From Zancudomyces culisetae HAW-14-8 (Eukaryota; Fungi; Kickxellomycota), in the NCBI GenBank assembly GCA_052426225.1, contig JBNJNM010000006.1, positions 2,356,001 to 2,420,000 on the forward strand: a DNA stretch of 64,000 nucleotides, read 5' to 3'. Both the position numbers and the translations under genes were made by a program. The notes beneath the pieces are model-generated. The model made no database searches. It was not told the origin of the DNA and saw only the letters and a list, made by a program, of their open reading frames with translations. This document shows positions 269 through 58,000 of the stretch, one piece after another. Every line of letters starts with the position of its first letter. Within the stretch, counting starts at the first letter, position 1.

Positions 269-3200
269 AAGGCTCGATCGTCCCGGTTGAGCGTCGTAAT
301 TCCCTCCGATCTTGAAGAGTAGATCTTAAGCTTGTATCACTAACTACGGGTATCTCATTTGGTTTGTTATAATATTTCAGCCTGTCACCATTTACGATAT
401 CGTAGTTGCTACTTGAGTCAGATATCAGGTATGTGCCATTTCCCGTGTTTCTCACTATATAATAAGGACCATTCCATTTTTCTTCGAATTTGGATGATGG
501 TGTTTCATTTACTTTTCAGACTAATTCACCATTGTTGAATGTTACCGGTGTCACTTTCGCATTATACCTACGTTTCTCATATTCCTTGTTTAAAGTAATT
601 TTATCTACTGCTAACTTCCTTATTAATGGTATATCGTTTTCAGTATATAGTATTCTCTCTTTTATAGATTCCTCAATATCCACGTTCGTATCTAAATTAT
701 TAAAAGATAATGGTGTAGTTATGTTAGTTCCGTATAATAATTCGGCTGGGGTCTTTTTTGTTATCCTATTTTTTGTAGTTCTCATAGTTAGTAACAATTT
801 CCACACATATTTGTCCCACTCTTTTTTATTCTGTTGGCAGATGGCAGTTAATATGTTCTTTAATATTTGATTCGTTCTTTCGACCTGTCCATTAGATCTT
901 GGTCTGTATGAAGTTGTTGGTGAATGGTTAATTCCCATAAATTTGTAGAAGTTCAAAATGGCATCACTCAAAAAATTAGCGCCTCTATCCGTTATTAACT
1001 TACTCGGCACGCCAAAATCTTTTACAACATCGTAAACTAAAAAGTTTATTACAGTATCTGAAGTTATGTCTTTCACGGCTTTGCATATTGGCCATTTCGT
1101 CAGATAATCGATTGCCGTCAATAAATATCGATTTCCTTGGTTAGAAGTTGGATTGATTGGACCAACTGCATCTAGACCAATAATTTCAAATGGTTTTTTC
1201 GCAATAATTGGGTTAAATTCATTGTTTAATTTTGGAGATCCTTTATTTCTTTGACAAATATCACAGAAATTTACAACATGTTTGGTTAGCGCAAATAGAT
1301 TTTCCCCTGTATATTTAGTTTTAACTAAACTCCATGTATTGTTTATTCCTAAGTGATTTTCATTGTGCAATTCAATTAACTTTTCTTTAGCCTCCAGCTC
1401 ATTCAAAACTTCTCGTTTTCCAAATTTTTTCGAATAAGCAAATAATTTGTCTCCTTCTAAATTATGTTTTAATGACCATTTTCTAATTTTTTCTCTCCAT
1501 TCACTATTTGCATTACTTGGGTAACTTCCATTAAATAAATAATTTTTTATAGAATTGAATTTCAAAATATCCATTGTAAATAACGATTTAGATATTTCCC
1601 CTTCATCTAAGTGAAGTGTGTTCGCTGCACCAGTAATAATATCTTTTGTCTGTTGAGAGTCATTATTGAAGTAGTTAGCCGAAATCGGTATTACTCTAGA
1701 TAACAGGTCGGCCGGATTAAGTCTACCTGCCCGGTGTTCGAGTGTGTAATCGTATTCTCGAAGAAGAATTGCCCATCTTGCCAATCGCCCTGTTGCCTCT
1801 TTCGAATCGAATAACCTGATCAGTGCCGAGTGATCGGTTACTAGTGTAAACTTCCTACCCCAAACATAGTTTCGGAACTGATTTACTGCAAATATAACTG
1901 CTAATCCCTCGAGGTGAGTTATTGAATAGTTTTTTTCTGATTTTTTTAATCCTCTACTTACAAATGAAATAGGTTTTTCTTTATCTTGTTGAACTTGACT
2001 CAATATCGCACCTACACCATTGTGTGATGCATCTGTAGTTATGATGAATGGCAGATCCCAATTTGGATGTGCTAATACTGGAGCTGTAGTCAACTTTTTC
2101 TTCATTGTTTCAAATGCCTTCTGGCATTCATGTTTCCAACCCCAAGGTATATCTTTTCTTAATAAATCATATAATGGTTTTATAATGCTTGAATAATTAT
2201 TTATAAATTTTCTGTAATAATTTGACATACCCAAAAAGCTTTGTAGTGCTTTAATGTTTGTTGGACTTGGTAATTCACTGATTGCTTTTATCTTTTTAGG
2301 ATTCGTTTCCAACCCTTCTTTTGAAACTATGTACCCTAAATATTCCAACCGTTCTTGTGCGAAACTGCACTTATTAATGTTTAACTTTAAGTTATGATCT
2401 TTTAAAAGTTGAAATACCGTTTCTAGGTCTTTGATGTGACTTTCGATATCTCGTGAAAATATAATGATATCATCCACGAATACAACCGCGGTTTTCCATA
2501 ATATAGGCCTTAAAACCCTCTCCATTAATCTCTGGAAGGTTGGTGGACTGTTACAAAGCCCGAAGGGCATCACATTGTAACAATACAACCCTTCTCCCGG
2601 AATTGTAAATGCTGTTTTGTGTTTGTCTGTTACTTTTAACTTTACTTGCCAAAAACCTGATAAGGCGTCTAAGGTAGTAAAAATTGCAGACCCAGCCAAA
2701 GCTTCAAATATATCAGATATGATAGGTAAAGGATAATTATCTTTTTTTGTAACCTGATTTAATTTTCTATAATCTGAACAGATTCTAAGACTACCATTTT
2801 TTTTCCAAACGGTAACCACAGGTGCGCACCAATCCGATACACATGGTTCAATAATACCCTTTTCCTTCATAACATTAATTTCTTCTCTAACTAACTCTTT
2901 CATAGCTTGGGGAATTCGGTACGGCCTCAACTTTATTGGTTTTGCATCGCCTGTGTCAATGCTATGCTCAACAGTTTCGGTTGCAGTGAGTTGTTTATAA
3001 TCTTGAGCAAATATCTCTTTAAATATTTCTAACAGATCATTTATCTTTGGGTGTATACTGTTATTTAAATCGTTCACTTTAATTTCCTCCTTACCAATTC
3101 CAAAAATTTCCACGCCGTTAGTTTCATAGGTTTCATTTTCATTATTTTCCGACTTGTTTTGCAGTGGTAACATGACTCGATCGTTATTTTTAATTAATGT

Positions 3201-4910
3201 TAAGATATTAGTACTTAAATTCAATTGTGCATTAAATTTAGTTAACCAGTCCATCCCCAGTATGAGTACCTTGTTGGGTAAGTGCATTACAAGTGCTTCA
3301 GTTTCAAATATGATGTTTCCTAAGCTAATAGGTAAATTTTTAATTTTTCCTGCCGTTTTGTGTTTACTACCATCCGCTGTTATAATGTATTCCATAGGGT
3401 TAGAGTCTGTTTGGATGTTTAATTGTTTTGCGGTTTCTGTTGATAAAACACTACAAGCAGCACCCGTATCGATTATTGCGGGTATTGTTTTCCCAAATAT
3501 ATTGACGCTAGTCTTGCAATTTGTTGATTTGCGATTAATTAAGGTGTTTAAGGTTTTTCCTTGTAAATATTTATTATTAAGCATATTTAATTGTGATTGA
3601 ACTATTGGAGCAATATCAATCAACTGTGGAATACTAATTGACGCTTTAACTCTTGACAGATCTTCCAGTAATGAGTAAGGCTTTAAGTAATTATTTTCTG
3701 CTTTACTGGCTACGGCTACTTGTTCCGTATTCTTATTTGCTTGTAATCTTTGAGTTTCCTGTCTAGTATGTATAGAAGAATTACTTTTTTCTCGAGTTGG
3801 TTCTTCGTTCTGATTAATTCTTTTTCGGGTTGACTCAACCTCGTCATTTCCCAGGTTAGTAACGCTCTTGAATTTTCTTTTATCAGCTATATAAACCTCG
3901 TTCTCATTATCTGTACCTGAGTATTCAGTAAAACTGCTAAAAACTTCACTATAGACATCCTTGTCTGTATTGGTTGTGTCGTAGGATTCTACTTCCAAAC
4001 AGTTGACTGCCTTTTCTACAGTAGATGATCGTTGCAATTCATTTGAATTTCCTTCCTGAGTCGACTCTGCTTTAGGATGTCCAGTATGTTCCCATTTATT
4101 GCCTTGTTGTTTATTCTCATATGGTTTATTTCTAGAATTGTATTGTGTTCTAGTACCTTTATTTTCTCGCCTATCCATTTGATTATATGATTGTGTACCT
4201 CTAGGTCTGGGTTCACTGATTTCTTTCAGTATTACTGTGCTTATCTGATCAAACTTTTCAATAAGCGTTTCAATATCAGCTTTTCTCTTAGGGGTTTCGA
4301 CTGCGATTTGATTCTCATTGTTAAAGCATAGTTTATCCATAGTTTCTTCTTCAATAAGTAAGTTAACTGCTTCTTCATATAGTTTAACTTTGCTTTTTAA
4401 TATAAGTTTTCTGTGCTCAGGTGCCACAGCTTTCATCAAGTATTTTATTTTTTCTTTGTCTTCTTTGATGTTTGCACGCCTAGCTGTAATATCGATTCGT
4501 ATTGATAGTGCTTCAATATCCTCTCCCTCTCTTTGGCGTATCTCTTGCATCTCATTCCAAGCCCTGTATTCTTCTTCTTCTCCTGCAAACTTTTCTTTAA
4601 ACTTTTTCTTTGTCTCTTCCCAAGATGTAAAAGTAGGGTACATACGATCGTACCAGGTTCTAGCTTTTCCAACTACGTACTTTTCCAGTTTCTCAATTCT
4701 GTTAGCCTCACTCCATCCATTGTTTTCGGATGCCAGTTCATATCTTTTTAGCCATTTCTTTGGCTCTAGCTCCTCCATTGGGTTAAACTTTTCAGGTTCC
4801 ATAATCGTTCTGTTCATATTACAGAGCTGCTGTAATATCATGTTTTCAAAGTTGGTTTTATCTTCAATTTTAGTCATTTTAGACTTGTTTTTTACCTCTG
4901 GTAATGTCAT
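267..4910 (-). pseudogene. E1 single-frame Gag-Pol polyprotein with an in-frame TGA at 516-518 in the integrase C-terminal region
   Basis: Protease IIDTGA; RT MPFGL and VFVDD; RNase H TTDAS/TDH/ADLLSR; IN HHCC (ELHNENH...CDIC) and DDE (GLDAVGP, LITDRG, QVERTN). The frame continues past TGA as KVNETPSSKFEEKWNGPYYIVR...VNGDRLK to the stop at 267. Confidence 0.93.
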
Positions 4911-5764: not shown

Positions 5765-8700
5765 TCAGACGTCCCGATCTGACAAGTTAATTGACTTATA
5801 GAACTGTAAGGACGTGCGGAGGTTACTAGGAGCAACATCAGGAATCATATATCCTCTGTCATTATATGGCTTTAATCTGTCACCATTGACATGATCCTTG
5901 TTACCTTCATTATCCATGATAATGTAAGTACCATGATCCAGTACCCTAACTATGCGATAAGGGCCAACCCAGCGAACTGAAAATTTGTGCTGGGGCATCG
6001 CCACGGCTCTAAGTACTTGGTCATTTAATTTGTACTTTGTTGGACTAACTTTTTTATCATAATGTGTCTTTTCGTAGCGCTTATTTGCTACCAACTTAGT
6101 GTACGCTTGGTCTCTTATTACTGGAAGCTCTTCTTTGATAAACTTGAGCCTTTCCAATATAGCTTCTGATTCATTTTCACTGGTTACCACAGGATTCCAA
6201 TATATGGGTGTTATTATTTTTACACCATACAGACTTTCAGATGGACTTATACCTATACTCCGGTGTTTCGATGAACGAATAATTAGGAGGACTTTCCACA
6301 AATACTTATCCCAGTTGGTCTTGTCTTTATAGCACAACTTTGACAAAACATTTTTGAGTGTTTGATTAAACCTTTCTACTTGGCCATTGGCCTGTGGCCT
6401 ATAAGCCGTAGTCGGGTGGTGATCAATACCCAAGAACTTATAAAATTGAACAGCCGTTTCGCTTATGAAATTTGAACCGCGATCGGATATCAATCTCTTT
6501 GGAACACCGTATAATGCGACTACATCATAAATTAAGAAATTAATAACTGTTTCTGTGGTGATGTTAGCCACGGCTCTTGAAATTGGCCACTTAGTGTTGT
6601 AGTCCATGGCGGTCAATAAATACTTGTTGCCGCTGGATGATACTGGGTTTATAGGGCCCATTGCATCAATACCTAGTATTTCGAATGGAGCTGATGAACA
6701 TATTGGACTTAAAGGGTTAACTCTTTTTACATGCCCTTTGTACTTTTGGCATAACTCGCAAAATTTTACGACTTTTTTACTATATCAAACATTCTTGGGC
6801 CAGTGTATAACAACTTCACTTTTTCCCAAGTGTTACCAACTCCACTGTGGCCATCTTCATGAACTCTTCTAACAACTTCTTCTGCGTTTTCTTCATTAAG
6901 AACTTCCCGTTCTCCAAATTTTTTACTTACTGTTACTAGTTTTCCTTCACGCAGTTTGTACGGATTAGTTTGTTTTCTAAACTTTTCTCTTTCTTCTTCA
7001 GTCATACCAGACGGATATGACCTATTGGTTAGGTATGATACTAGAGAGTTGTATCTTAGAATGTCCATAGCAAACAATGCGTTTGAATTCATAGTTTCTG
7101 GAACGTGTGGATCTGGGCTTGATCTAGATAAATAATCAGCGGGATTATTAGTCCCTTTGCGATGTTCAATCTCGTAATCATACTCTTTTAATATCAATTC
7201 CCATCTAGCTAGACGACCGGTAGGCTCTTTGGACTTAAAGATATTAATGAGTGCAGAATGGTCAGTGATAATTTTAAAATGTCTCCCAAGTAAGTAATGT
7301 CTGAAGTGAGTAACTCCCCAAACTACACCTAGTCCTTCTAGGTGAGTTATAGCATAATTTTCTTCAGCCTTTGATAATGTACGGCTTGCATATGCTATAG
7401 GACAATCTTTTCCGTTGTAGTTTTGGCTCAAAATTGCGCCTAAACCTAATTTGGACGCATCAGTAGTGATCGTAAAGGTCATACCCCAATCTGGGTGTTT
7501 CAAAACTGGTGGATTGATAAGGATCTCTTTAAGAGTGTCTACAGCTATCGAACAGCTGCTGTCCCAGTTCCACTGACAATCTTTTCTTAGTAACTTTGTC
7601 AATGGTTTACTTATCTTTGCATAATCTTTAATAAACTTCCGGTAATACCCGGTCATGCCCAAGAAACTTTGAACATCTTTTACGTTTTTAGGGTACGGAA
7701 CTTTTGCCATAGCTAAGGTCTTGTTGTGGTCAGTTTCAATTCCTTTCTTTGAAACTACGTGCCCTAAGTAGGAGATGCGTTGCTGAGCGAATACGCATTT
7801 CTCCTCGTTTAATTTTATTTTTGCGCTCAGTATTAGTTCAAATACTAGTTTTAAATCAATTAAATGTTGATCAAAAGAAGATGAATAAACAACTATGTCA
7901 TCAATAAAGACGACTACTGATTTCCAAAGAAGTGGCTGCAATACGGTCTCCATTAAACGCTGGAACGTGGCTGGACTATTACTCAGTCCGAACGGCATTA
8001 CTTTATAACAAAACAACCCTTCTCCAGGGAAGGAAAAAGCGGTTTTTTCTTTGTCTTGTTCCCTGATTTTCACTTGCCAGAACCCACTTAGGGCGTCTAG
8101 CGTTGTGTAATACTGAGCTCCTGCAAGTGCATTGAAAATATCTGATATGTTCGGGAGTGGGTACGTGTCCCTTTTAGTAACGGCATTTAGCTTACGGTAA
8201 TCAGAGCACACCCTGAGCTTACCGTTTTTCTTCCAGATGGTTACCACAGGAGCGCACCAGTCTGATTGGCACTTTTCAATAACACCATTTTCCAACATTT
8301 TTGAGAGTTCTTCTCTGACTTTCTCTTTCATAGCTTGTGGGACCCTGTAAGGTCGTAGTCTGATGGGCTTGCTATCTCCTGTGTCTATTTCATGCTGAAC
8401 TAGATCTGTACTGGTGAGTTCCTCCAATGACGATGCGAATATCATTTTGTAGTCTGAAATTAACTGGATGATCTCTGTATTGGTTTGTGCTGTGCCTTCA
8501 ATTAACGAAACCTTCTTTGCCCATCCTACCAGTTCATCGCTGCATTTGACCTGAGTAGATATATCCCATGAAATATTGCTGTTTTTGTAAGGTATGGACG
8601 CCTTGTCATTGTTTAAATCGATGATGACGTTGTGTTTCTTTATCCAATCTACGCCTAGCACAAAGGTATCATTGTTATTTCCTGCCATGATCAATACATC

Positions 8701-10179
8701 TGCTGGGAAACTTATGTTTTTGATGAGTACTGGGACTTTCCAAACCTTTCCTAGAGTCACTTGTGGGGTTCCATCGGCCATGAGGAGTATTTCTTGCGCC
8801 GAGTGATCTATACTCAACTGAAATTTATCTGCTAGTGCTTGTGTCATCACACTACAGGCTGCGCCTGTGTCGATTACCACTGTACATTCGCAATTGAACA
8901 GAGATATGGTGGCTTTGCAGTTGGTGCTAGGAGGCTGAGTTATGGTGCTTAGGGCTTTGACATTTTCTAGGTTATCCGTTCCGCATACTTCCTTAAGTTC
9001 TGACCTGACCATCGGCGAGACTTTTATCAGCTGCTCCAAGGTTATACTAGCTTTGATAGATCCTAAGTCTTGTTTAACTGAATAGGTTGGCTTGTCCCTT
9101 GCCTTGGCAATCATTCTTTCCATTGGTTTCCTTTGTCCTTCAGGTGTTTCCTGGTCTGTTTTAAACTGCGGTGCGAGAGAATTAGCTATTTCATATTCCT
9201 CGTTTACTGCTTCATGTTTTTCCAACTTATTTTTCTTTTTTATATTTTTATCATTTTCTGTAATTAGTTTACGCTTCTCGATAATACTGAGCTCTTTCCA
9301 GCGGAGCTCAATATCATCTACTAAGTCATTTTGATGGTCTTGAAATAACTCTACTACACTTAGCTCTTTTCCTTTATTGTTGAAGCTGGGTTGGATGGTA
9401 GGCCTAGCTTTTAGTGGACATTGCGGACTTATATGCCCGACCTCATTGCAGGTGTAGCAGGTAGGTGTAGTGTACTTGAAGGTCATGTTAGCTTCATTAC
9501 TACTATGGTTGGTGGGCTTTGCCTGTGGAGGGTTAGTATCAGCTTTAGGTCTAGGCTTAGTGCGGTGGGATGCCAACTCTTTGCCTGGATGAGTCTGAAT
9601 TCTTGGCTCCTGTCTTCCTTCTGAAACCCTTTTATCCCTTCTTTGGTTGTAGGTGTATACGTTGTCCTGTATAAACCTTTCTAACTCCTCTGTGTCTTTT
9701 GCCTTTTGAATGGCCTCGTCATAGCTGTTGATTCGACTTTTCAGGATCTCAGTTTGGTAACTTGGTAACAGGGCGGTCATAAGGCATTGATACTGGATAG
9801 CTTTGTCCGTGACTTTGGCAGATACAAATAGGCTCTCAAGTCTACTTATAAAGTCTTCTATATCCTCCGAAGGTAACTGTCTGATTCTTTGTAGTGCACG
9901 CCATGAGTTTAATACGGATTCCTTGCTTGTGTACTTCTTCAAAAACGCCTCCTTATACGTTTTCCAGGTAGTTTCTTCACTTTGCACGGACTCATTCCAA
10001 AGTATAACTCTCGGGCCATAGTAGACGTCAATATACTCCAACTTTTGTTCATCAGTCCAACTCTCACTACGGGCGAACAGTTCAAACCTTTTAATCCAGA
10101 TGTTTGCATTCTGGTCTGAGGATCCATTGAATACTGGCGGTTCTGCGAGTCTTGGTACTCTTGCTGAATTTCCAATCAT
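5765..10179 (-). pseudogene. E2 Gag-Pol polyprotein with a single frameshift at the T6 run 6773-6778, inside the integrase zinc finger
   Basis: Gag zinc knuckle CYTCNEVGHISPQC; protease VIDTGA; RT MPFGL and VFIDD; RNase H TTDAS/TDH/ADYLSR. Adding one A joins ORF 6766-10179 to ORF 5765-6661 (IVKKVVKFCELCQK...GID..GP, ISDRG, QVERFN, WVGPY). Confidence 0.93.
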
Positions 10180-10228
10180 GATTTTTGCTTAAATTTGCTG
10201 TTTGTTACTCAATTTCCTTTCTGTTTGT

Positions 10229-10246
10229 GTCCTGGCTGGATCACCA
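10229..10246 (-). other. E2 primer-binding site (18 nt)
   Basis: Same TGGTGATCCAGCCAGGAC as E1, but 25 nt from the 5' LTR. Confidence 0.9.
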
Positions 10247-10271
10247 TTTATTATATATTTATTATAATTAC

Positions 10272-10669
10272 TGTCGTATAATTTATAAATTATTTTTTAA
10301 GTCGAAACTCCATGATGACTTTATTTAGAATTTTGTTGCCTTATTATACTTTTTTTTAGACAACCAATTTACTAAACACTAAATTTATACTTAACTAACT
10401 AATAATTAAATCATACTAAATTAAATTATGCTGTTTCCCCGTGTAGTTGATTATTTGCTTTTATCAGGTTATCAAATTCACATGTCGTGGTTGTAACATT
10501 CTCAGATTTTCCAGATGTAACTTTCTCAGATTTCCAGATGTAACTTTCTCAGATTCCAGATGTAACTTTCTCAGATTTCTTCAATGTTACGTGAATTTAA
10601 TATTACCAATTTTGGAAATTACAGTCATTTTTACTCTTATATAATTTACGGTAATTTAAATTCACGACA
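10272..10669 (-). repeat. E2 5' LTR (398 bp)
   Basis: Direct repeat of 5352-5749, including the tandem repeat at 10492-10579. Confidence 0.97.
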
Positions 10670-10672
10670 AAC

Positions 10673-10895
10673 TGTTATATAGTGGAATTATATACCTGTA
10701 TTTCCTTGTATTTTATTGGTTAATTTAATTAGTATTATTTTATGCATTAAATAGTCTAGTTTTGAATTAATTAATAAATTGTCTTTTTCTCCCACAATAA
10801 TTATAGACCTAATATATAATAATAAAAGTCCCGTCCTGTATAATACTGGGTAATTATATTACTCAGTAGGACGTTAAACATGTAATTATACAACA
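10673..10895 (+). repeat. E3 5' LTR (223 bp)
   Basis: Direct repeat of 11458-11680, followed by the PBS. Confidence 0.95.
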
Positions 10896-10896
10896 G

Positions 10897-10914
10897 TGGT
10901 GATCCAGCCAGGAC
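10897..10914 (+). other. E3 primer-binding site
   Basis: TGGTGATCCAGCCAGGAC(TC), 1 nt after the LTR; same 18-mer as E1 and E2. Confidence 0.93.
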
Positions 10915-11444
10915 TCCACTCTGTTGAGAGGAGTCTTATTGGGCCGAATTCGAATTGAGATTGGCCAAGATGAGATTCGAAATTTCGAAATCTCGAAATT
11001 CAGATTGCGGAATTCGTGCGATTCGAGTAGTTCAGAAGTGGACAATAGGATACTAGAGCTTGTATAAATGGACTAGGCAGATGGTTGGAGCTCACAGGCT
11101 TCAGGTGATGCAAGATGATTTATGTGAGGGACGAGATGCAGATGGGTAATCTGCAGTGTGAAGCATATTGGAACTTGCTAGGGACCGTTGGAAGTGAGTG
11201 TGAGTCGTCCATGGGCCATGTATAGTCTGAATACACCATAGTAGGAAGTCCAGGAAGCGATTTCGAAATCAACAATTTCGACATTTATGAGTTCGAAATT
11301 CGGAATTTCAGTGTGAAGTCACATGATAACTTTAAAGCTTGATAACAACTTAGTTTTAGTTTTATAAGTATTTTATTTACTTAAAATGTCATTTTTTAGA
11401 GACTAAGTAGTTTTGGTGAGCTTGGTCGAGGGCGACTCAAGCTT

Positions 11445-11454
11445 AAAGGGGGGA
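11445..11454 (+). other. E3 polypurine tract
   Basis: AAAGGGGGGA, 3 nt before the 3' LTR. Confidence 0.9.
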
Positions 11455-11457
11455 TAC

Positions 11458-11680
11458 TGTTATATAGTGGAATTATATACCTGTATTTCCTTGTATTTTA
11501 TTGGTTAATTTAATTAGTATTATTTTATGCATTAAATAGTCTAGTTTTGAATTAATTAATAAATTGTCTTTTTCTCCCACAATAATTATAGACCTAATAT
11601 ATAATAATAAAAGTCCCGTCCTGTATAATACTGGGTAATTATATTACTCAGTAGGAAGTTAAACATGTAATTATACAACA
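11458..11680 (+). repeat. E3 3' LTR (223 bp)
   Basis: Direct repeat of 10673-10895. Confidence 0.95.
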
Positions 11681-11688
11681 AATCATAA

Positions 11689-11769
11689 CCGAGAATAGCT
11701 CAGCGGTAGAGCGGGAGACTGTAGTTAACTGTTATCTCTAGGTCCCTGGTTCAAATCCGGGTTCTCGGA
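11689..11769 (+). tRNA. tRNA-Tyr(GUA) with a 9-nt intron (11725-11733)
   Basis: Acceptor CCGAGAA/TTCTCGG with the eukaryotic Tyr C1:G72 pair and A73; D arm GCTC/GAGC; anticodon arm GGAGA-CTGTAG^A-TCTCT; T arm CCTGG-TTCAAAT-CCGGG. Confidence 0.96.
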
Positions 11770-11772
11770 AAC

Positions 11773-11786
11773 TTTTTAATTTTTTT
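11773..11786 (+). terminator. RNA polymerase III oligo-T terminator
   Basis: T5 then T7, starting 4 nt after the tRNA 3' end. Confidence 0.8.
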
Positions 11787-14246
11787 ACACTTTTTATTAT
11801 TTAATTACTATTTCTTAGCGAATTAAGTTTTACTTAACTTCAACTACTACCAATAGTAGCAATTTAAATATACACGAATAACTTTTTATTATTTAGTTTG
11901 ATATTGTAATGTAGTATAACAGCTAGATTTTGTTTTCTGCGAATCAATTGCGATTCCTGAACGTATGATAATCACCAATGCGAGCAAACACGATCAATAG
12001 TTAAAACGATAGAATACAATAAAGTTAATAGAAAACCGAATATAGAGATATGTGACTACAAAAAGAAACATCTTTATTCTTTCTTAACTGAATATACTTT
12101 CATATACTTTTATATAAATATCTAGTACTTCTAGTAATTATTAATTGATTTAGTTTACCTGGTGTTTATTATTATTATTCAATAGTAAATAAGTTCGAAA
12201 ATTCGTATGATGGCAATCAGAAAAGTGAAGTGATCCACGACCTGAGTATTACTGACATAATCAGTTTTATATCTAACTCAGCCATCACATTAGCTGAAAA
12301 TTATATTTGATAAACTATAATATCTACAATATAATACATTAACATTATCAAATTAACCGAGGTTGGTTAGTGCCATATTTATTCCAACCATTCTGTATTT
12401 GTTTCTGTATTTAATTCTAATGATGTTTTCAGTTTATTTTTTTATTGTGGGTACTATTTATTAAACTAATCATAATATGATGAAACTATTAAATATTTTA
12501 TTACGAATAATAAAGATAATGAGAATAAGAAACTAGACGATGCCTCCGTATTTCCAAACATTGTCTGTCCCTCGATGAGTGTTGCGTCTCATATATGTAG
12601 GTGTGTTGTAATCCTTCGTTTGTTTTTTATTTTTATATCATAGTTTTATATTCACCTCAATTTATATATTTACTTTCCTATTTTTATAATTGTGATATAC
12701 ATTTCATGATGGTATTATGCGGTCTTGGTTTAAGTTGTGAGCCGTTTTTTAGATAATCACAAACTTGTTTCAGTTAAAATTGTGGTGTTGGCGATTGATT
12801 TATTGTCTCTGATTTTTTGGTGGTAATTAACTGTATTATATATTACGTTAGAAATTGTGATAACTAGTACTTATTAATTGGTGAAAATATTAATTTATTT
12901 TACTAGATACTAGCTTTTTAGCTTTTTGTAATTTTCTTCTTAATGTTAGCATTTTATATAATTACTCCAAACAGCAAAACGGAAATGTTTAGTGATCCTA
13001 GGTCTGCGTATAAAGATCATGAGTGTTATTTAAATTCACCTCACATTATCTAAATATTTTATTAGCTTGTATATTTCATCAACTGTCTAATACCAAATAT
13101 TAATATAACACAGTAAATTAGAAATAGTTAGCTGTTATAATTATAAACCAGTCTATTTCATATTTTAACTATACTTTAATTGTTTTTAATGATTAATATA
13201 TTTTATTTACTTCGTTATCTATCTTTATACTAGTTACGATACTAGTTTAAACATTTCATACTAAACTAACTAGAGATAATATAACCTTTGATAACTGCAA
13301 ATAAACCATACCAAACTCAGCTATCCTTTGATTGAAATTTTATGATATATAGTTTATTATCAACATTACACATTTGTAATTTTTCGCATTTTTAATCTTA
13401 CCTTTTAATTTTTTGTACAAAATGATGTATGATCGTTTACTAATGATTTTGTTTTTTATTCAGTGCCAATGGTCTACTTTCTATTTTATTTCAATAATAT
13501 TAATTAGTAACTACCTAATAATTCATATAACTGTATCTCTACTTACAAAAATTGACAATTCTTTTTACTAAAAGCAATCTTTATTATCTACTTTTCCTAA
13601 CTCGCTTTACCAACCCTAATTCCAGTTGGAGTTCTTTTCATGTCAAAAGAAAGGATATGCACCCATGCATATAATTAACTCACTAACAATTTGTTTTTTC
13701 ACTATACATTAACATTTGTTTTAGTATCTATTCAAACTATTTTTAGATATTGGGTTTTTTTTTCACTTCAATCAGAATGTGACTGGATTGAAAATGATAC
13801 AATATTAAAATAGTTAGATATTCATAATATTTAGTGAATTTTGTATAATTCTAGTTGCTTAACAAGTGTAATAGCTTGTAATATTTATAAGATTTATAAG
13901 ATTTTAAATATTCTTAATAAAATGATATGTTATATACACTGACTATATTCTAATTATAAAGCATCGATATAGTACATATTACCACTCAATAACTAGTGAA
14001 TCGATAAAAAATTTTAATGGATGATGAGATTAACATTTTAACAGGTTCTCTATTAAATAGATTGAGAATCAGATGTTTGATTATTCGAGTCAACCCATTT
14101 ACTTTTTTATTAACATATTTTTATTACAGCCATTATGATATATTGTAATCCCTACTTTACTATGTTTATAGGTTGTAATAAATTATTTTATCTAGGACAT
14201 ATTTTTCCATAAAATAAAAATTTGGTAAAACTGAATCAGGTAAATA

Positions 14247-15386
14247 TTAAACTAAATTTAGTTTTTTCAAAACAACTCTTGCAATAGATGGACCAATATT
14301 CATTGAAGATTCACCTGCTTTTTCGCTGCCTAATCCCGCGAATTGCTTTGCTTCGTCCATATTTTTGCAACATAAAATCGCAGATTCGCATACAGCCTTG
14401 TTATTGTAAACAATGTTTGCTATGGCAACTTCGGCGGCATCCTTAATGTACTTGAAGTGTTTTGTTCCACCTTTTATGAGCGAGCCTACACACACCACTG
14501 CATCCACAGGCGATGGTGCTTTTCCAGAACCCTGTTGAATTTTGGTAAGATGAGCCTCATAATCTCTTGTTCTGGATACTTCAATAATGTAGTTTGCAAG
14601 ACCTGGTAGTTCATAGGATCCTGCTGCGCTATATACCTTTACATTCTCTGGGTTCACACCTGAGTTGATCATTTCATTTGCAATTCCCAATAAGATCTCG
14701 CTATTTATTTCCATATTCCATTGTGCACACAAAATTGCAACGTTTGGTTGTTTAGAAATATTGTGCTGAGTGACATTTTCTGTAAAGGCTTTCGTGATTT
14801 CAGTGTCAGATTCACCTTCACAAAACATTTTTCTTGTCTTAATTTCAGAAAGAGCTGCTGTAGCCCAAAAGTATCCATGATTAGCTCCCTTTTCTACTCT
14901 ACCTATTCCGGCCCTTTCCAATCCTTGTTCGTAGTTAATACAGGTCAAAATTCCCAAAATACATGGTACATTGGTTTCGAGAATAATTTCATGAACCTCA
15001 TTATATGATTTCTCGCACTTTGCGTCAAATTCTCCCGATTTTTCTTCCTCTTCAATAAATATTCCAACACAAATCACTGCATCGTACTTGTAAACATGTT
15101 CTACATTTAGATATGCTCTATTGGCTCCCAACTCACTGATCTGTCCATCAGCGCATTTTCTGCTTTGCAGAAGTATTTTTTTTGTCTCTTGAGGAATCAG
15201 GGCAGGATCTGTTACATTTTCAAAGTGAATATTTGATTTAGCAACACCAGCTTTTGTGAGACCATCGACTACTCCATCCACAAGGGTTTTTACAATGATC
15301 GTTTCCTTTTGCGCCGAAACGATTAAAATGTTCGGATTTAAATCTCCAGCTTCAATTTGTGTTTTTGGGGCATCTACGTACGGCAT
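14247..15386 (-). CDS. RIB4: Tandem two-domain 6,7-dimethyl-8-ribityllumazine synthase (379 aa)
   Basis: Two lumazine synthase repeats, aa ~18-185 and ~214-376. Domain 2 has AQWN, GSYELP and LIKGGTKHF; domain 1 has PCILGILTC, EQGLERAG and NHGYFW. Confidence 0.9.
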   Translation of the reverse strand: MPYVDAPKTQIEAGDLNPNILIVSAQKETIIVKTLVDGVVDGLTKAGVAKSNIHFENVTDPALIPQETKKILLQSRKCADGQISELGANRAYLNVEHVYKYDAVICVGIFIEEEEKSGEFDAKCEKSYNEVHEIILETNVPCILGILTCINYEQGLERAGIGRVEKGANHGYFWATAALSEIKTRKMFCEGESDTEITKAFTENVTQHNISKQPNVAILCAQWNMEINSEILLGIANEMINSGVNPENVKVYSAAGSYELPGLANYIIEVSRTRDYEAHLTKIQQGSGKAPSPVDAVVCVGSLIKGGTKHFKYIKDAAEVAIANIVYNNKAVCESAILCCKNMDEAKQFAGLGSEKAGESSMNIGPSIARVVLKKLNLV

Positions 15387-18300
15387 CTTTTAACTCTGCT
15401 TTTTATATGTTGTTCCTTTGTGATCTCGCTAGGTATATTTTGTAATAATATAATTATAGACCGTTATTTTTAAGAACCGCCTTCGTTACTTTATTTTTGG
15501 TTTTGTATTAAAAAACTGACCAGTAAATTAAAAATATTACTAATCAAAATATTTCAATTTGGTTTGTTCAAGTTGATTCCAAATTAAATTAGCTAAAAAC
15601 CTGTGTATAGCTATAAAAAAAGCTGTATAATGAGTAAACAAAATATAATTTCGCTAATTCTCATTAAACTTTCACATTAACACAACTAATTGATAGGTTT
15701 TGGCTTGATTACAATCATCCAATGTGTTTTTATTATGCTTTTTCAGCAAATCATTTTTATTAGGGCGTGTGCCAATATTGTATTTACAGAATCTCTAAAT
15801 GAGGAGTTAAAGCATACTCCCACTTTGCTTGTGGGGGAGGAGAAGAGGAATAATGAAGGGGAAGGGGGAATTAAGCAAAAATCTAGAAACATAGATATAC
15901 ATCAAATTGGTAACTTTCTGGAATAGAATACCCCACCTTGTATATTTTTTACAATAGTTTGAGCTATTTACTCTTTTTCATTTTGCCTTGTTCATGGAAT
16001 TAGTCTAGTTTAAATGATATAAAAGAATATATCAATCAAATACATATAAATCAAAAATAAATTGATGATGTGAAATGTAAATAGACTCAACATCATGGTG
16101 GACTGCTGGTGATTTCTACAGAAAAACTTTGTATTCACGAAGATTGTAACTCCTCACTCAGCAGTTATTTAATTCGAATCTATTCGTGTTAAATACCATA
16201 ACTATCAAGTACTAAAATTGAACAATAAATGAAATATCATGCGGGAATCATAATACACCTCTATAACATTTCTATTTGGTTACAAAAAAGATACTTGATA
16301 ACCCTACATAATTAGGTAATATCTATTCAGCGATTGCTTATACCCTAAAGTACCAATACAAACGTACTGTGGAATTAGTTCAAAGACTATGTATTTACTT
16401 TTCAGTTTTTACTCCCTGTATATTATATCTGATTTGTACATTGTAGAAAAATATTAAAAAATCAATTTATCATCTACAGTACCAAGTATATGCTGTAAGA
16501 TTTGTTTACAAGAGTCGTGTATTATTTATTTTGAATTAGATTAGCTCATATTATACTTTAGTGTTCGACCTTATGAAAACATTAAAGCCACTAGTCATAC
16601 AAAACCATACGCAATAATAAAAAAAGTACTGCTACAATAACTATGAAACACAATTCATTGATGCTTGAAGCCTATTGAACATAATACCATTTTTATCCAC
16701 GAACCATTTTGTATGTACTGGCCAGGAGAAAATTATATGAGTTTAAGGAGGCGTGTTACCTAAGATCAATAATTGATTTTTGCCAATAAAATTTTTTACT
16801 GCTTTCAAATGAATCCACATGTACTAATTTTTAGCTCGTATTGGTTGAACAGACTAACGAACCAATTGTGGTATATGAGGCTGGCTTTGCACAAAAAAAA
16901 AATAGTTCCTACTTGCTTGGGTGATTAAAATTATAAAGCACGTATAGCAACATTGCATGATACCAGGATCATCTCGATTACTACATCCATAGTTGATTAC
17001 AAAAAAATCCTTATCTCTTTTATATTTTTAGAAATTAGAACAGTTTATTGTTGGAAGCGTAATCAAATGTTAATTAAATATTCCCCCACCCCAACCTTTT
17101 ATACACCGTTTATTTCTTAACTTTAGGGAAAAAAGATCGCCAAGCATAGGGTGTAGCGACTAGTTGATACCAATGTATTTCTTATGTAATAGTAAAAATC
17201 AAAAAATAATAATAATTGGTTCTGTTTATCATCAGAATGACTTTCATGATCCCAATATTAGCTTAATATTTGAAGTATTTGAAATATAATACCAGATGCC
17301 ACAAGTGTAAACAAGTATCTCTTTCAAAGTACACCTATTTTTATCTGTACTCATAAATTTATTTTGACTACTATTGTAAATGTTTGAAAATATAATATTA
17401 ATAAGGATGATATGACTTTTATTGTAATGGTGTGTTGACAATTTATTTCTGTTCCAAATTTAATTAATTAGCATGAACATAGTATAATAATAAAAAACAA
17501 AAATAGAAATAACAAACCAAGTTGAAGTTAAAAAACTCAAAGTAAAGCTAAAACGCATCGATAGAAAGAGATTGAGTTAGTAAAAAGTATTACCGACTTT
17601 ATACCCAACATTATTCAAACTACAAGAAACTGGGTATAATTTCATCAAAGTATTATAAATCGGCACTCGTTGTGAGAGAGTAACAGGGATTACGGAATAG
17701 CACATTCTCAATAGTCATTGAAACAGAAGGTTATTCTCAGAAGCGCTTTTAGAGATTACTGAAAGGTAACTGACTTTATAGCCTTATCTACATTTTGATG
17801 GTATTTTACTTTATACTTTCTTGGCGTTGCATAATTTTTTCGTTTCTTTGAAACGGTATTTTGGGAAATGGAGGATATATGTTGAAAATATGCTATGAAT
17901 GTGTGATGATTTTATTTTAGTTGTCATAAACATGTCTTTTACTTGACTGTAATTTGCAAACTACACAAGGATTTATTTTAATTTACCCATTTCCAGAAAA
18001 CGTCATTGCCAATGGGTTTTATTTAATTGGCAAAAAGGCTAATAATTGTAAAGTCGTGTATTTGATATGAGATCGTGACACATCTCAAATTGGTGTGACA
18101 AAAAGAATAAACAAAGCCAATCTGGCTGGGCATCTATAAGAAGCCTTCCACAATAACATACAATATTAACATGAAAATTTTATTCTCCCCCTCCAATGAC
18201 GTCTTTGAAAAAAGACTTGCTTTGAATTACCTCAGCTTGTACCAATTAAACAAGAGGAGCTGATGTTTTTATTTATGTATTTTAAAATTACGGGATGCCA

Positions 18301-18802
18301 TTGCCTTAAATCAACGCAATCACAAGAGAACGATTATCAAAAGCGTTGGGAATTAACAGACAAAATATAATGATGTAGAGAGAAAAGAAAAAGACAATCA
18401 AGGTATTATTTTTGAAGAGTTTTCAAAGATAATTGAGGATTGGTTGGCTTATGTTGTAACGTGTTTACCTTTGCAACAGACAGTTTTACACTATTTGTTC
18501 TAAACCTATGATTTCTAGCCATCAAAACATATCTATTGGCAATTTACTAAACCAGCTTAAAATTAAAATAGGCAATAATATCAAAAAATCTTTGTAGTAG
18601 TAGCCGGTTACTGAATCATAACCAATTGGTACTAGACAAACAACCATAACGGTGTTTACGCTGCCAAGGAATTTTTTTTTTGAATAATTGCTATATAAAA
18701 GGCAAACGCCCTGCAATTAGCGACTTTTCACGAGTTTAGTTCGAGAGAACAAAAATCATAATAGTAAGACTTTCAAAAAGTCACCAGGTATTAGCTTAGA
18801 AA

Positions 18803-52573: not shown

Positions 52574-55083
52574 AAACACTCAAACTGACTGCAATCCAGT
52601 CATAACCCACCTAGCGATTTTTAGCTTTTTGCTGTTTTATTTATCATTCTTTTTTATGGTTTTTTTTGGGGGGTTGTTGATACTTTTGTAGTCGTAGGAG
52701 GGTGAGAAGGGGGGGCGCTCAAGGCTATTCTATCTCTAAATAAAGAGGCATGCAGTAGTGTGAAAATTGCGATGTGTTCCAATTGTTGGCCAACTATTAG
52801 TATATTTGCCACAAACATGCCTGTTCACTTGGGTCCGAAAATTAAATATGATTGCTCGAGGCTTGGAGCCAAGGAAACCTGAAATCTGAAATCTGAAATC
52901 TAACATAAAATCTGTTCCTACAAAAGTCAATATTCAGGGTTTGCTAGAAATTGTTTTGACCCTTCTTTGGTAATGGTTTGGTTTATATGAAAAAAAATGC
53001 ATTTTCGTAATTGAAAACGCACAAATATTCTTTCGTTTTTTCATTTGCCAGTTTTGTTTGAATTAACAGTTTTCGTGTTTGGTGATTGTTTGTACAACAG
53101 AGTTTATTAATATTTTTTTAATTTATGTCCACTTCCTAAATTGGATAAAACTAAAATAGCACAAAGTTCTTTGTATCTAATTTGCGTCTTCAAACAAATA
53201 AAACTCGAGAATTTTCAATTGAATTAATATGAGAAAGCTAAGCTAAATTCCCCTAGGTTTCACTAGATTTCGCTGGACTTGGCTGGGTTTGCCGAAGCTT
53301 GAAAAAAATGAAAGCAATGCTGACGGGAAACTGACAGGAATGAATGTTTGTTTGTAATAGCGAGATTAAGCACAGCATAGCAGTATGCTAGTGAGTAGGT
53401 AAAAGTGTGAGCGTGCGGTATGGATAATGATAATGGGTTGTTGTCCAGGATCACATCCTATTTTTTTCTGAACAACTTGTGTGTTTTTATGGGCAGAAAA
53501 TGTTGTACTTTTATGAGCTACTGTTTATTCGCTTATACCTCAAATGATGAATCAAACAGACATAACAAATATGGAAATGGAGTTTACTAAGCCAAGTTAT
53601 ATCCGCTAAATGATTAGTTGTAAATTAGTAAAGATTTTCTTGCATTCTTTCAAAGAACGCAAATATTTAACCATATGTAGTTGATTCCCAACACAGCAAG
53701 AAATAAACAAATCGACTGAAGTGCATTCATCGTTGTATAGCAGCAGTTTGGTATGGAAAGTATTATTTTTGAAGTAAATGTTTTGGATATTAATCCAACT
53801 TTCTATAAATTGAAATTAACTGGAAGAAAGCAGCTGAAATAACGGTAGTGTGGAGTAATCTGGATGAAAACAATCGGGCAAAGTTTTTTTTTTGGGGGGG
53901 GGAGACCAAATCCACATCCAACTCTGGTATTTTTTTTATAGGAAAGCGTGCAATGCTTGAATTTTCAAACCAGTTTAACAAAAAAAGAGAGCGGTTTTAA
54001 ATTGGAATGTTGCCCTACTAAATTGATAAGCATGGTGTCAATGGGCAAAGGTATCAAGAAAAGAACCAAACCAGCCAATCTGCCATTAAATTATTATCCT
54101 CGATACCACTCCTAATAGCGCTGCAATATTTTGTTTAACTATGGGTCTAGTGAGTGTTTTTGTCGATCCTTGCCTTACATTGAAGCTAAAGGACAGTTTC
54201 AACATTTGTACACATTTCTAACTATTTCTAAAAAAAAATTAAAAAAATAACAATAATACTCGCGAAAAATTATAGTAAACAAACTGTTTGGATAAACACA
54301 ACATTTTTGGAAGTTTTGTTTTCCATATTAAAAAAATTAGTGAAAATTAGAGTTAATGAGAGTGTTGCTGAGACACATGAAAAATTATGAATAAGCTCAA
54401 GACGAACTAGCAAAAAAAAAATTTTGAGTATACTGCTAATGCTAGATTCAAGCAATATTTTTTTTTGAGCATTGGACAATTGTAAAAGCAACGTAAAAGG
54501 TATTTTGGGGCAAAGCGAAAGTAAAAGCACTGAGCACGAGCAGTTGTATCTAATCGGATATAGGTTAAAGGAAAAATCCTAAAAAGCGGCGCAATCGGGT
54601 TATAAAAGTAAGAGGTAAATAGTACAACTTTCAGAGGCAGTGTTGGATCAGAGAACAAGTTCCGTGTTCGCTGCATAATTTACCTGTTGTGCAAATTTAA
54701 TTTATACATCCGATTCTAAAAAAAACTACGCCATTCAAAAGTAATTATATTTTGTTGCCTGGTTCGCAAGAAAGGAATAAAAAACAACATAAATCGATAA
54801 GAGAACATTTACAATTTAAGCATTCTAGGCTGTGTGATAGCAACGACCTATTTATAAGTGCGATAGAATAGAGGATCGAGTTTAAAGTGCTGTATTTTCG
54901 AATTCGACTATTGACAAAAGGAACAGCTAGAAATAAGCGGCATACGAAAAGGGATAAGTAGCATCAAGGAAAGGAACTGTAATCGGATATCGTAAATAAA
55001 CGATACCAAAAGGATGTAAAAGGCCCCTTCTTTCTTTGTTTTAGGCTATTTCTTATTATTTGGTAGAAAAAAAAACGAATAAT

Positions 55084-58000
55084 ATGGAAGTACATACGGG
55101 CAGAGTATTAAGAAAGGAATTTATAGGCAAGGAAGACACACTTATAGAGAGAGGTTTGGTATCAGAAAAATCATTAAGTCGGGACGCAGAGTACCAACTT
55201 TTTTATGATAACTATGCCAGGACAAACAAAAAATCAAATAATATAATGGATAGTAAACTAGACGAAAGCATAGACAACTATAATGGAAAAAATAAAGCGA
55301 GAGTGAACCAGGAATCAAGACCCGCCCTAAGTAGTTACATTGACAACACTAGTATGTATGGCAGCGAGATATTTGATGGCGATGGCGATGGCGATGAACT
55401 AGGGCTTAGTTTGAAGGATGATCCATTATTTGACAATAATGCGATAATTCGGCGAATAATGACAAATCAAACCAAAAATCAAAAGTATATAGATGGAGGG
55501 GGTGGGCATACCGACGAAAGTCGCAGCTATGATATCTCCAAAATTAAGGAAAGGCATATACCTTCTAAAATCGAAAAAAATGTCAAGAGGGCTGAAAAGA
55601 AGGAGACACCTAAAAGTGAACCTGTGGCTGAGAGTGCGAATGGGGATAAGGAAAAGGCAGCGACCGTTACGGGTGCCAGTAAGAGGCGCGTGGTTCCGAA
55701 ACGGATATTCGAAAAGGAATATCGGGAAAGTTTTCGGCCCAAGGTGATTCCAGAGGAAGTTCAGAGGCGCAGATTAAAAACAAAAAGCAGGTCGACAAGC
55801 TTAGTAGTTGCTCCAGGCCAGAATGACGGTGGAAAAGAGGTTGAGATGGGCAAGCTGGACACTTTAAGTGCAATGGAAGCAATGAATGAACAGATAGACA
55901 AGCAAATGGCGTTAATAAACGGCAGAAATATTCAAAAGAAGGATAATGGCGAAAGCACCACTAATAGCAAAAACGGTAACGGTAGCAAACAGAATGGTGG
56001 GGAACAAAAAACGGGGCGGGAAGTGTATGCGGTGCCGGATGACAGTGTAGCGGTGGTTCAGGATGAAGAAAAAATTAAGGCGTTGGTGAGCAATGCAAAA
56101 AGGATTATTAATATGATGAGAAGTAAGAAAACCCCATTTAGTGATGAGGCGGAAAGCATGGGGGAGGAAAGTAAAGAGCGCAAGGAGATCCAGCTTAATA
56201 GGTTTGCAGTTACCGATTCTGAAGAACAAGATGATGTGGATAACGGAAGTGAGCCAGATATATCTGTGGATGAATCTCGAAACGATACAGATGATCGATA
56301 TGGTGGTGAAAGTAACCCAACGACAGACGATATGACAGGAGTAAGCCAAATTCATGCGTTTGACAGCTTTCCATCCCTAAACAGGTACGGAAGCATCAAC
56401 AGCGTTAATGATGTACAAATATATGGACGGGATAATAGTGTGGGGATAGGACTGAGCAATTACGGACTAAAAGCGATACAGGTTGGACGTAGTAACAGTA
56501 GTAGTGTTGCTGACAGGGCAGGGAGTGATAAGAACAAGAACAGGAAAAATAGAACGTTTGCAGCTAGAGGGGGCAAAGGCGACTATTTTAGGTCTTCGAC
56601 GTTCAATATAGGAAATGGTGATACCGAAGATGGACAAGCTACAAGAAAAAACAATAGGTATAACGGCGGAGTCAAACAAAGCGGCTCAGAAAGGTTACTC
56701 GAAAAGCTTGGTAATTTTAGCGTTGAGGATATACATAGTGGAAAAGGGGAGGTAGGAGCTAACCAGAGTGACAGTAGCTCGGATTTTGTCAAGAGAGACC
56801 GAGCAGGCAGTGAAAACAAGCACCATCGACATAACAAACACGAAATTTATGAAGGTGAGAAATTAAAGCCTACTGCAAACAAACTAAAGGGTGGCTTGAA
56901 CCAAAAAGGCAACAGTTCGGTTGACTTTTATCGGGAAAGTACAAACAGCCCAAATATAAAACAAATGGCTCTTTTAAACAATGGGGGAAAGGGTGTCAAT
57001 ACATTACCCAACGATAGCCAACTTGACTTTTACGATCCGTTTTCAGTTAACAGTATAGACCGACATGATTTACACGATGAGAAGTTAAGTGTGTTCGATG
57101 ACCACAAGTCAACCAATATGCTTGGTGGGCTAATAGCAGACCCTAAATCTGGAAGACTTGGTAGTGAGTACGCACCGAACCAAAGAGGGCTGAGGGCAAA
57201 TATTGCTGCCAAAAAGGATAACCAAGCTGATAATTCAGGCGGAAAACAAAAGCAAGGATTTCGCAGGCTCCAGGTAATAGAATCATATTCGATGGCTTCC
57301 GAACAGGGTGGTGAAAACCATCAAGATTATGACGAAGATGGCGCCGAAAGTGAAAGCGGTGATTACACAGATGGGAGCGAATATGAAACCGAAGATGAAA
57401 GCCAAAACGAGGCTGAGGGCAGCGATGTTTTATCGACGTCACAACTAGCAAGAATCACGTCACCATCGGCTCGACCGCGGTTACAGACACTGGCAAGTCA
57501 TGTATCAACACAAAGCCATTCCAGCTATAGTGTGGAACGAGTCGGATCACCAATTAATCGCAGCTTGGTGCCTCCAAGAATTGAGTCGGCAAACGCGCTA
57601 ATAAATGGATTATCACCAAACACATCCCGAAAGGTATTGTTTTCGTCATCATCCAACATCTCTAGTGAGGTGCTTGGTCTTTCGTTTACCAGCAGCATTG
57701 ATAAGCTGTCACCGTTTTCCAACAGCATGCTTCCACTTGACAATAACGTGAATGCAAGTGGCGCTTCGTCGTCAATAAGCATTGAAAACAATATATATCG
57801 TAAAGCGCAACGAAGACATGTAGGAATCCAGGTAAACACGAAAAAGCAAGGACCTGATGAGATTACCGCTCGGACTGCAGAAAAAGCCAATAAACAGTTG
57901 TATACAATGTTGGTGACCTTACACCACCAATTTGGTGAGTTGAAAACCAAATACTTTACCGATGTTACAAGACTCAAAAACCTGCTAGACGAATCTAACA

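What the first reader, a model, noticed from the sequence alone, without database searches (positions are those of the whole stretch)
14247..15386. Fused double lumazine synthase whose two domains lost complementary halves of the active site
Established: lumazine synthase is a ~150-170 aa subunit with active sites at subunit interfaces. One subunit gives the aromatic residue (B. subtilis Phe22, fungal Trp), the GSxE loop and the G-x-T-x-H loop (His88); the neighbour gives the FG(V/L)LT strand, Arg127 and the N(H/K)G segment. Seen: domain 1 has lost the first set (AQKE, TDPALIP, IEEEEKSGEF) but keeps the second (ILGILTC, EQGLER158AG, NH170GYFW). Domain 2 keeps the first set (AQW223N, GSYELP, IKGGTKH310F) but has lost the second (ESAILCC, EAKQFAG, NIGPSI). 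Inference: exactly one composite active site per chain, with the reciprocal interface dead or repurposed. I know of no described lumazine synthase with this architecture.
Basis: partly seen in the sequence, partly recalled or inferred. Interest (0 to 1): 0.9.

Follow-up and report, generated by a model that had tools for sequence, protein, structure and literature searches.

The report
Two-domain, one-site fungal lumazine synthase
In insect-gut fungi, the vitamin-B2 enzyme that is normally a ring of five identical subunits has become one chain of two unequal copies, each keeping half of a single active site, and it appears to have given up the ring.

Summary
Confirmed and extended. The intronless 379-aa ORF holds two lumazine synthase (LS) domains, 26% identical to each other. 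Domain 1 keeps the Arg127 half of the interface active site (R158, NHG) and has lost the Trp/GSxE/TxH half; domain 2 is the reverse (permutation p=7e-5). The same fusion and split occur in seven more Harpellales proteins (Smittium, Furculomyces). It is the only LS gene in this genome (probably Zancudomyces culisetae; the second copy looks like an allele), and genes for RIB1, RIB3, RIB5 and a RibD_C reductase are present. AlphaFold gives two canonical domains (pTM 0.88), with indirect signs that the two live faces meet within the chain. New here: the unused faces lost not only catalytic residues but also their packing surfaces, which became charged, so the universal pentamer ring probably no longer forms. 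An independent parallel turned up: diplonemids carry five LS domains in one chain with unevenly degenerate sites but uncharged interfaces. No paper on either was found in the open-access library. Activity, oligomeric state and expression are untested. A first-stage reader of this scan noted the same gene on another piece of this genome.

The parts
14247..15386 (-). Intronless RIB4 ORF, 379 aa, two tandem lumazine synthase domains
15366..15386 (-). Invariant N-terminal heptapeptide (residues 1-7); matches the N-terminal arm that reaches the neighbouring subunit's beta3 strand; kept only on domain 1
   Evidence: 7/7 invariant; model residue 5 aligns with S. pombe residue 7; arm role
14820..15362 (-). 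Domain 1 (residues 9-189): complete LS fold, donor of the Arg127 half-site
   Evidence: VIA Z 22.1, rmsd 2.3, 158/158 residues to 4kq6
15192..15212 (-). Domain 1 degenerate beta3-alpha2 loop (residues 59-65), replacing PGS/AFELP
15027..15056 (-). Domain 1 degenerate phosphate/His loop (residues 111-120), acidic run replacing KGxTxHF
14997..15023 (-). Domain 1 helix alpha3 outer face (residues 122-130); Tyr91, Ala95 and Gly99 positions now polar or charged
14832..14975 (-). Domain 1 beta5-alpha4-alpha5 (residues 138-185), the retained Arg127 half; most conserved long segment (32/48 invariant, pN 0.13)
14913..14915 (-). R158 = B. subtilis Arg127, phosphate binding
   Evidence: role
14874..14882 (-). 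N169-H170-G171 = Asn134/Lys135/Gly136
14751..14819 (-). Inter-domain linker (residues 190-212) with a predicted extra helix 195-202
   Evidence: covered without differences by an independent gut-metagenome contig, 14750-14979
14250..14750 (-). Domain 2 (residues 213-379): complete LS fold, donor of the Trp/GSxE/TxH half-site
   Evidence: model 213-379 aligns with an LS-fold chain, Z 15.2
14715..14723 (-). Q222-W223-N224 (Phe22/Trp gate, Asn23), invariant
14610..14621 (-). G256-S257-Y258-E259 ribityl-binding loop
14454..14486 (-). Residues 301-311 with T308 (Thr86) and H310 (His88)
14391..14432 (-). Domain 2 alpha3 outer face and turn (residues 319-332); positions 97, 101, 105, 110 now polar or charged
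14340..14342 (-). F349, the lost Arg127 position of domain 2

Best explanation
This is the working RIB4 lumazine synthase of Harpellales, made by tandem duplication and fusion of an ordinary single-domain gene followed by reciprocal subfunctionalisation. Shown from sequence: domain 2 supplies W223, the GSYE loop, T308 and H310; domain 1 supplies the N-terminal arm, the beta5 strand, R158 and NHG. Inferred: both fold as canonical LS domains, and the linker sets domain 2's beta3/alpha2 edge against domain 1's beta5/alpha4/alpha5 edge, rebuilding one pentamer-type interface inside the chain. That single site condenses the ribityl-aminopyrimidinedione with DHBP as usual. Inferred further: the two outer faces became hydrophilic, so the five-membered ring, which a two-domain chain could not tile, is abandoned and the unit is a monomer or a small non-ring oligomer.
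For: Reciprocal retention, p=7e-5. Same pattern in eight proteins at 45-57% identity to this one. Only LS gene in the genome, with pathway genes present. AlphaFold pTM 0.88; domain 1 superposes whole on LS chains. Spill-over in structural alignments places the C-terminal end of domain 1's LS match at domain 2 residues 269, 254 and 227, all on domain 2's live face. Of 69 columns uncharged in single-domain LS, 11 became charged in domain 1, 10 of them on its unused face; 5 in domain 2, 3 of them on the unused alpha3 stripe or turn. Face stripes are 67% and 48% charged versus 4% in single-domain LS and 0-15% in diplonemid ring domains.
Against: No activity, oligomer or RNA data. The model used only 8 sequences. 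The face stripes were assigned partly from memory and after seeing the data. In diplonemids the chain runs the other way (half A of domain n with half B of domain n+1), which here would make the live site inter-chain. Single LS active-site residues have weak effects on catalysis, except charge loss at Arg127.
Confidence: 0.6

Rival explanations
1. Same chemistry and same split site, but the live site forms between chains: domain 2 of one chain with domain 1 of the next, in a head-to-tail dimer or an even-numbered ring of 4 or 6 domains, with the dead interface remodelled.
For: In the diplonemid five-domain chain the sequential direction is A(n)-B(n+1) (r=0.97, best of 24 ring orders), which would place the dead faces together here. 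Harpellales-specific conserved hydrophobic residues (Y128, I135, F173, M225, L233) could form new contacts. The N-terminal arm has low pLDDT in the monomer model.
Against: The dead faces are charged, with acidic residues on both (E130 on domain 1, E319 on domain 2). Domain 2 lacks the conserved N-terminal arm that diplonemid domains keep. The model appears to dock the live faces within the chain, pTM 0.88.
Confidence: 0.22
2. A permutation-by-duplication intermediate: the conserved central stretch (residues 138-316) folds as one circularly permuted LS domain that still forms pentamers, and the outer halves form a degenerate second domain.
For: The best-conserved parts are nearly contiguous; a domain2-N plus domain1-C chimera is closer to normal LS (0.32-0.34) than either domain (0.28-0.31) or the reverse chimera (0.23-0.27). 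Engineered circular permutants of LS fold.
Against: The model has residues 9-189 as one canonical domain, and permuted PDB chains align only to 11-149. The invariant N-terminal arm lies outside the central stretch. Core hydrophobic positions are kept in both canonical domains.
Confidence: 0.08
3. The protein is no longer a lumazine synthase but a lumazine- or riboflavin-binding protein, or has another activity, and the fungus relies on the uncatalysed reaction or host flavins.
For: Long branch; invariant non-canonical residues near the site, such as M225, N228, G307, K312, F173, E181.
Against: Exactly one full set of catalytic residues is kept, including the phosphate-binding Arg and Thr that serve DHBP. 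No other LS gene exists, while DHBP synthase and riboflavin synthase genes do.
Confidence: 0.08
4. Artefact: two separate genes or a mis-assembled duplication.
For: No RNA reads were available.
Against: One uninterrupted frame in both copies, the same fusion in independent assemblies of other species, domains only 26% identical, linker matched by an independent contig.
Confidence: 0.02

Closest known systems
Fungal type I pentameric lumazine synthase RIB4 (S. pombe 1kyv, C. glabrata 4kq6, S. cerevisiae 1ejb; nearest single-domain sequence hit Tieghemiomyces parasiticus KAJ1909459.1)
   Same: Fold (Z 22-23, rmsd 1.5-2.3), fungal Trp gate, NHG segment, insertion after alpha2, one complete set of catalytic residues.
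   Different: Those are single-domain homopentamers with five equal sites. Here two 26%-identical domains share one site and the outer faces are charged.
Diplonemid RibB-RibA-(LS)x5 fusion
   Same: Tandem LS domains in one chain, with matched loss of the two halves of individual sites.
   Different: Five domains that probably close a single-chain ring (pTM 0.86) with interfaces left uncharged; opposite chain direction; fused to upstream enzymes; an independent origin is likely.
Engineered circularly permuted Aquifex LS, cpAaLS(84) and cpAaLS(119) (PMC11912573)
   Same: Shows that LS termini can be joined by a short linker.
   Different: Artificial, single-domain, still ring- and cage-forming.
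Trimeric riboflavin synthase (RibC/RIB5)
   Same: Internally duplicated chain whose site lies between an N-terminal and a C-terminal repeat (PMC10366380).
   Different: Unrelated beta-barrel fold and reaction; site between chains.

Membership tests
Lumazine synthase (PF00885 / TIGR00114) | Profile match above the curated cut-off | tested here: met
   Pfam 138 bits vs 26.7; each domain 64-72 bits; TIGR00114 117.5 vs 84.6 for the whole chain, although each half alone is below it
Lumazine synthase (PF00885 / TIGR00114) | Flavodoxin-like alpha/beta/alpha fold with four parallel strands | tested here: met
   Predicted model; domain 1 Z 22, domain 2 Z 15
Lumazine synthase (PF00885 / TIGR00114) | Phe22/Trp, Glu58, Thr86, His88 on one subunit and Arg127, Lys/His135 on the neighbour | tested here: met
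   Met once per chain, split over the two domains; not met by either domain alone
Lumazine synthase (PF00885 / TIGR00114) | Catalyses ARAPD + DHBP to 6,7-dimethyl-8-ribityllumazine | not testable with these tools
   Needs an assay; indirect support from sole-copy status and pathway genes
Type I pentameric fungal LS | Single domain of about 150-200 aa with both interface faces conserved | tested here: not met
   379 aa, two domains; unused faces 67% and 48% charged vs 4%
Type I pentameric fungal LS | C5 homopentamer with five equivalent sites | not testable with these tools
   Oligomeric state cannot be computed here; the sequence argues against it
Circularly permuted LS | One domain built from the C-terminal part followed by the N-terminal part | tested here: not met
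   The model keeps canonical order in residues 9-189; permuted chains align only to 11-149; model-based only
Archaeal pentameric riboflavin synthase (LS fold) | Closer to 2b98-type chains than to LS | tested here: not met
   Z 14-15 and 13-15% identity vs Z 22-23 and 27-32% for fungal LS; a trimeric-type riboflavin synthase gene exists in the genome

The most novel reading that the evidence does not exclude
A natural monomeric lumazine synthase: the first member of the family to work without any ring, with one intrachain site, and one of two independent eukaryotic conversions of the LS homo-oligomer into a single chain (two domains in Harpellales, five in diplonemids).
Probability: 0.45. Interest if true: 0.85.

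Novelty: new variant of a known kind. Interest (0 to 1): 0.74.

Why it matters
The characterised lumazine synthases in the reviews read are pentamers or assemblies of pentamers with equivalent interface sites, and catalysis is attributed mainly to proximity and entropy (PMC2935281, PMC13151069). A natural chain holding one interface tests directly whether the ring is needed for catalysis, and lets each half of the site be mutated independently, which a homopentamer does not allow. It is also a clean natural case of duplication, fusion and reciprocal loss turning a symmetric oligomer into an asymmetric single chain, with the diplonemid five-domain chain as an independent comparison. Both could be useful asymmetric building blocks for LS protein-cage engineering.

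Tried and rejected
Two separate genes or an assembly artefact: rejected. A hidden single-domain RIB4 elsewhere in the genome: none by Pfam or by a fungal single-domain query at E<=1; a gene cut into very short exons could still be missed. The second copy on contig C12 as a paralogue: rejected as a probable allele, since about 34 kb are collinear at 99.5% and other genes pair the same way. A search with domain 2 alone found nothing (word-index limit), and metagenome contigs gave no relatives. The tree of half-domain chimeras did not resolve the origin because of a long branch, so vertical descent rests on best hits being fungal and eukaryotic. dN/dS is saturated, so only pN contrasts are usable (one search failed on an N). 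No RNA run was available. ESM Atlas and viral fold searches showed no two-domain LS. Literature searches for Harpellales riboflavin, Diplonema LS and tandem or monomeric LS found nothing relevant; subscription papers are not covered. PMC2144189 was not held.

Full report
Observation. The minus-strand ORF 14247-15386 encodes 379 aa in one frame. TIGR00114 and Pfam PF00885 find two lumazine synthase (LS) domains, 26% identical to each other. Against solved fungal LS chains, phmmer matches the N-terminal part of the enzyme to domain 2 (residues 212-325) and the C-terminal part to domain 1 (138-180), which already shows the split.

Source and context. The neighbours are fungal genes and Ty3/gypsy retrotransposons. 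The genome has 27.09 Mb in 25 contigs, and contig C12 is 2,524,970 bp, the N50 printed for the Zancudomyces culisetae HiFi assembly (PMC12611240); I infer that organism. The only LS matches in the genome are this gene and a copy on C12 that differs by one residue. C12 is collinear with the window over about 34 kb at 99.5% and other genes pair the same way, so this is probably one locus on two haplotypes. Genes for GTP cyclohydrolase II, DHBP synthase, riboflavin synthase and a RibD_C reductase are present. The pathway therefore needs an LS, and this is the only candidate.

Conservation. Full-length relatives exist in Smittium angustum, S. megazygosporum, S. culicis (two), S. simulii, S. mucronatum and Furculomyces boomerangus, at 45-57% identity. 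Among 1.84 billion representatives nothing else scores below 1e-30, and the next hit is a single-domain LS of Tieghemiomyces with both half-sites intact. The fusion is thus a Harpellales trait. Invariant positions cluster in the N-terminal heptapeptide (7/7), domain 1 residues 138-185 (32/48) and domain 2 residues 215-271 (22/57) and 296-316 (14/21), against 15/130 for the rest of domain 1 and 4/63 for the end of domain 2. pN follows the same order, with pS saturated.

The split site. In canonical LS, Phe22, Thr86 and His88 come from one subunit and Arg127 and Lys135 from the adjacent one; an uncharged residue at the Arg position inactivates the enzyme (PMC2935281, given there in B. anthracis numbering). 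Scored against a profile of 88 single-domain relatives, the first set is kept in domain 2 and lost in domain 1, and the second set the reverse (permutation p=7e-5). Domain 1 has an acidic run in place of KGxTxH. Domain 2 has F/Y/H/S/L at Arg127 and has also lost Pro110, Thr117 and Gln123.

Structure. AlphaFold on the 8-sequence alignment gives mean pLDDT 84.6 and pTM 0.88. Residues 9-189 superpose on whole LS chains in canonical order (Z 22, rmsd 1.5-2.3), and 213-379 on an LS-fold chain. This argues against a circularly permuted fold, although the conserved core is nearly contiguous and a chimera of the kept halves resembles normal LS more than either domain does. Indirectly, when LS-fold chains are laid on domain 1, their last residues spill over onto domain 2 residues 269, 254 and 227, all on domain 2's live edge. 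This fits an intrachain composite site, but it is weak evidence.

Loss of the ring. Of 69 columns that are uncharged in single-domain LS, 11 became charged in domain 1, ten of them in the beta3-alpha2 and beta4-alpha3 region (positions 54-62, 84-99); five did so in domain 2, three at positions 97, 101 and 110. Helix stripes that I assign, partly from memory and after seeing the data, to the two interface faces are 67% (domain 1, unused face) and 48% (domain 2, unused face) charged or amide, against 4% in single domains and 0-3% on the used faces. A two-domain chain cannot tile a five-membered ring with alternating domains. I infer a monomer or a small non-ring oligomer.

An independent parallel. 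The representative search exposed a diplonemid protein, RibB-RibA followed by five LS domains, in Diplonema papillatum, D. japonicum, D. ambulator and Flectonema neradi. Its five-domain part models with pTM 0.86. The strength of the Trp/His half of domain n tracks the Arg half of domain n+1 (r=0.97, best of 24 ring orders), and the N-terminal residue of B. subtilis LS lands on domain 2's beta3 when its body lies on domain 3. This supports placing the N-terminal arm on the Arg-donating face, which would explain the invariant heptapeptide of Harpellales domain 1. There, even catalytically dead faces stay largely uncharged (0-15%), as expected for a closed ring, which makes it a useful contrast. 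Its direction is opposite to the intrachain reading here, which keeps the inter-chain rival alive.

Mechanism and odds. Shown: fusion, reciprocal conservation, sole-copy status, presence of pathway genes. Inferred: LS activity (about 0.9), one site per chain built from both domains (about 0.8), intrachain site with the ring lost (about 0.6). Rivals: inter-chain site 0.22, permuted fold 0.08, changed function 0.08, artefact 0.02.

Comparison and novelty. It is a member of the LS family by profile, fold and one full residue set, but it fails the single-domain, two-faced definition of the type I pentamer. Reviews describe pentamers and assemblies of pentamers only, and searches found no natural tandem LS, nor anything on Harpellales or diplonemid LS; subscription literature was not searchable. 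Databases label these proteins as plain LS or hypothetical. Duplication-fusion with half-site loss is known in other enzyme families (my own knowledge), so this is a new variant of a known kind. No RNA run was available; one gut-metagenome DNA contig matches 14750-14979 exactly, covering the linker.

Noticed in passing
P0158-P0163 and P0014 (L010:3001-8676); Diplonema papillatum KAJ9467862.1: Diplonemid DHBP synthase + GTP cyclohydrolase II + five tandem LS domains in one chain of about 1310-1380 aa, a probable single-chain pseudo-pentamer (pTM 0.86). Only the domain 3/4 site is fully canonical and the 4/5 site looks dead. No paper found; deserves its own study.
   Followed up: partly
window 11677-45524 vs G000:C12: Contigs C6 and C12 look like homologous haplotypes (99.5%), while RIB3 and RIB5 on other contigs are single copy; possibly a disomic chromosome or an unpurged haplotig. 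C12 has about 390 extra bases at window 13435-13439.
   Followed up: partly
window 516-4910 and 5765-10179: Two Ty3/gypsy-type LTR retrotransposons; the first has one long gag-pol frame, the second has its integrase in a separate frame. Repeats at about 10270-11680 occur many times in the genome.
   Followed up: no
window 55060-58710 (+): 1216-aa ORF with no Pfam match at E<=0.01.
   Followed up: no
G000:C21:470625-471056: A second, weaker GTP cyclohydrolase II-like gene besides the main one on C13.
   Followed up: no
L011:10001-11068 (Smittium angustum, P0001): The locus holds 39 N and reads as a 355-codon frame; the annotated 336-aa protein lacks a stretch present in Furculomyces P0007, so its intron may be an artefact of the gap.
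   Followed up: partly
P0057 (ENA contig of 1.8 kb): Bacterial-type LS with two apparently identical tandem copies, both with intact sites; probably an assembly artefact.
   Followed up: no
(BFVD): LS-fold domains inside larger giant-virus proteins (Orpheovirus 572 aa, Indivirus 1101 aa).
   Followed up: no
window 10200-18800: The gene sits alone in an AT-rich stretch (25-34% GC) between a retrotransposon and a P-type Ca-ATPase gene; the neighbours called in the Smittium loci differ.
   Followed up: partly
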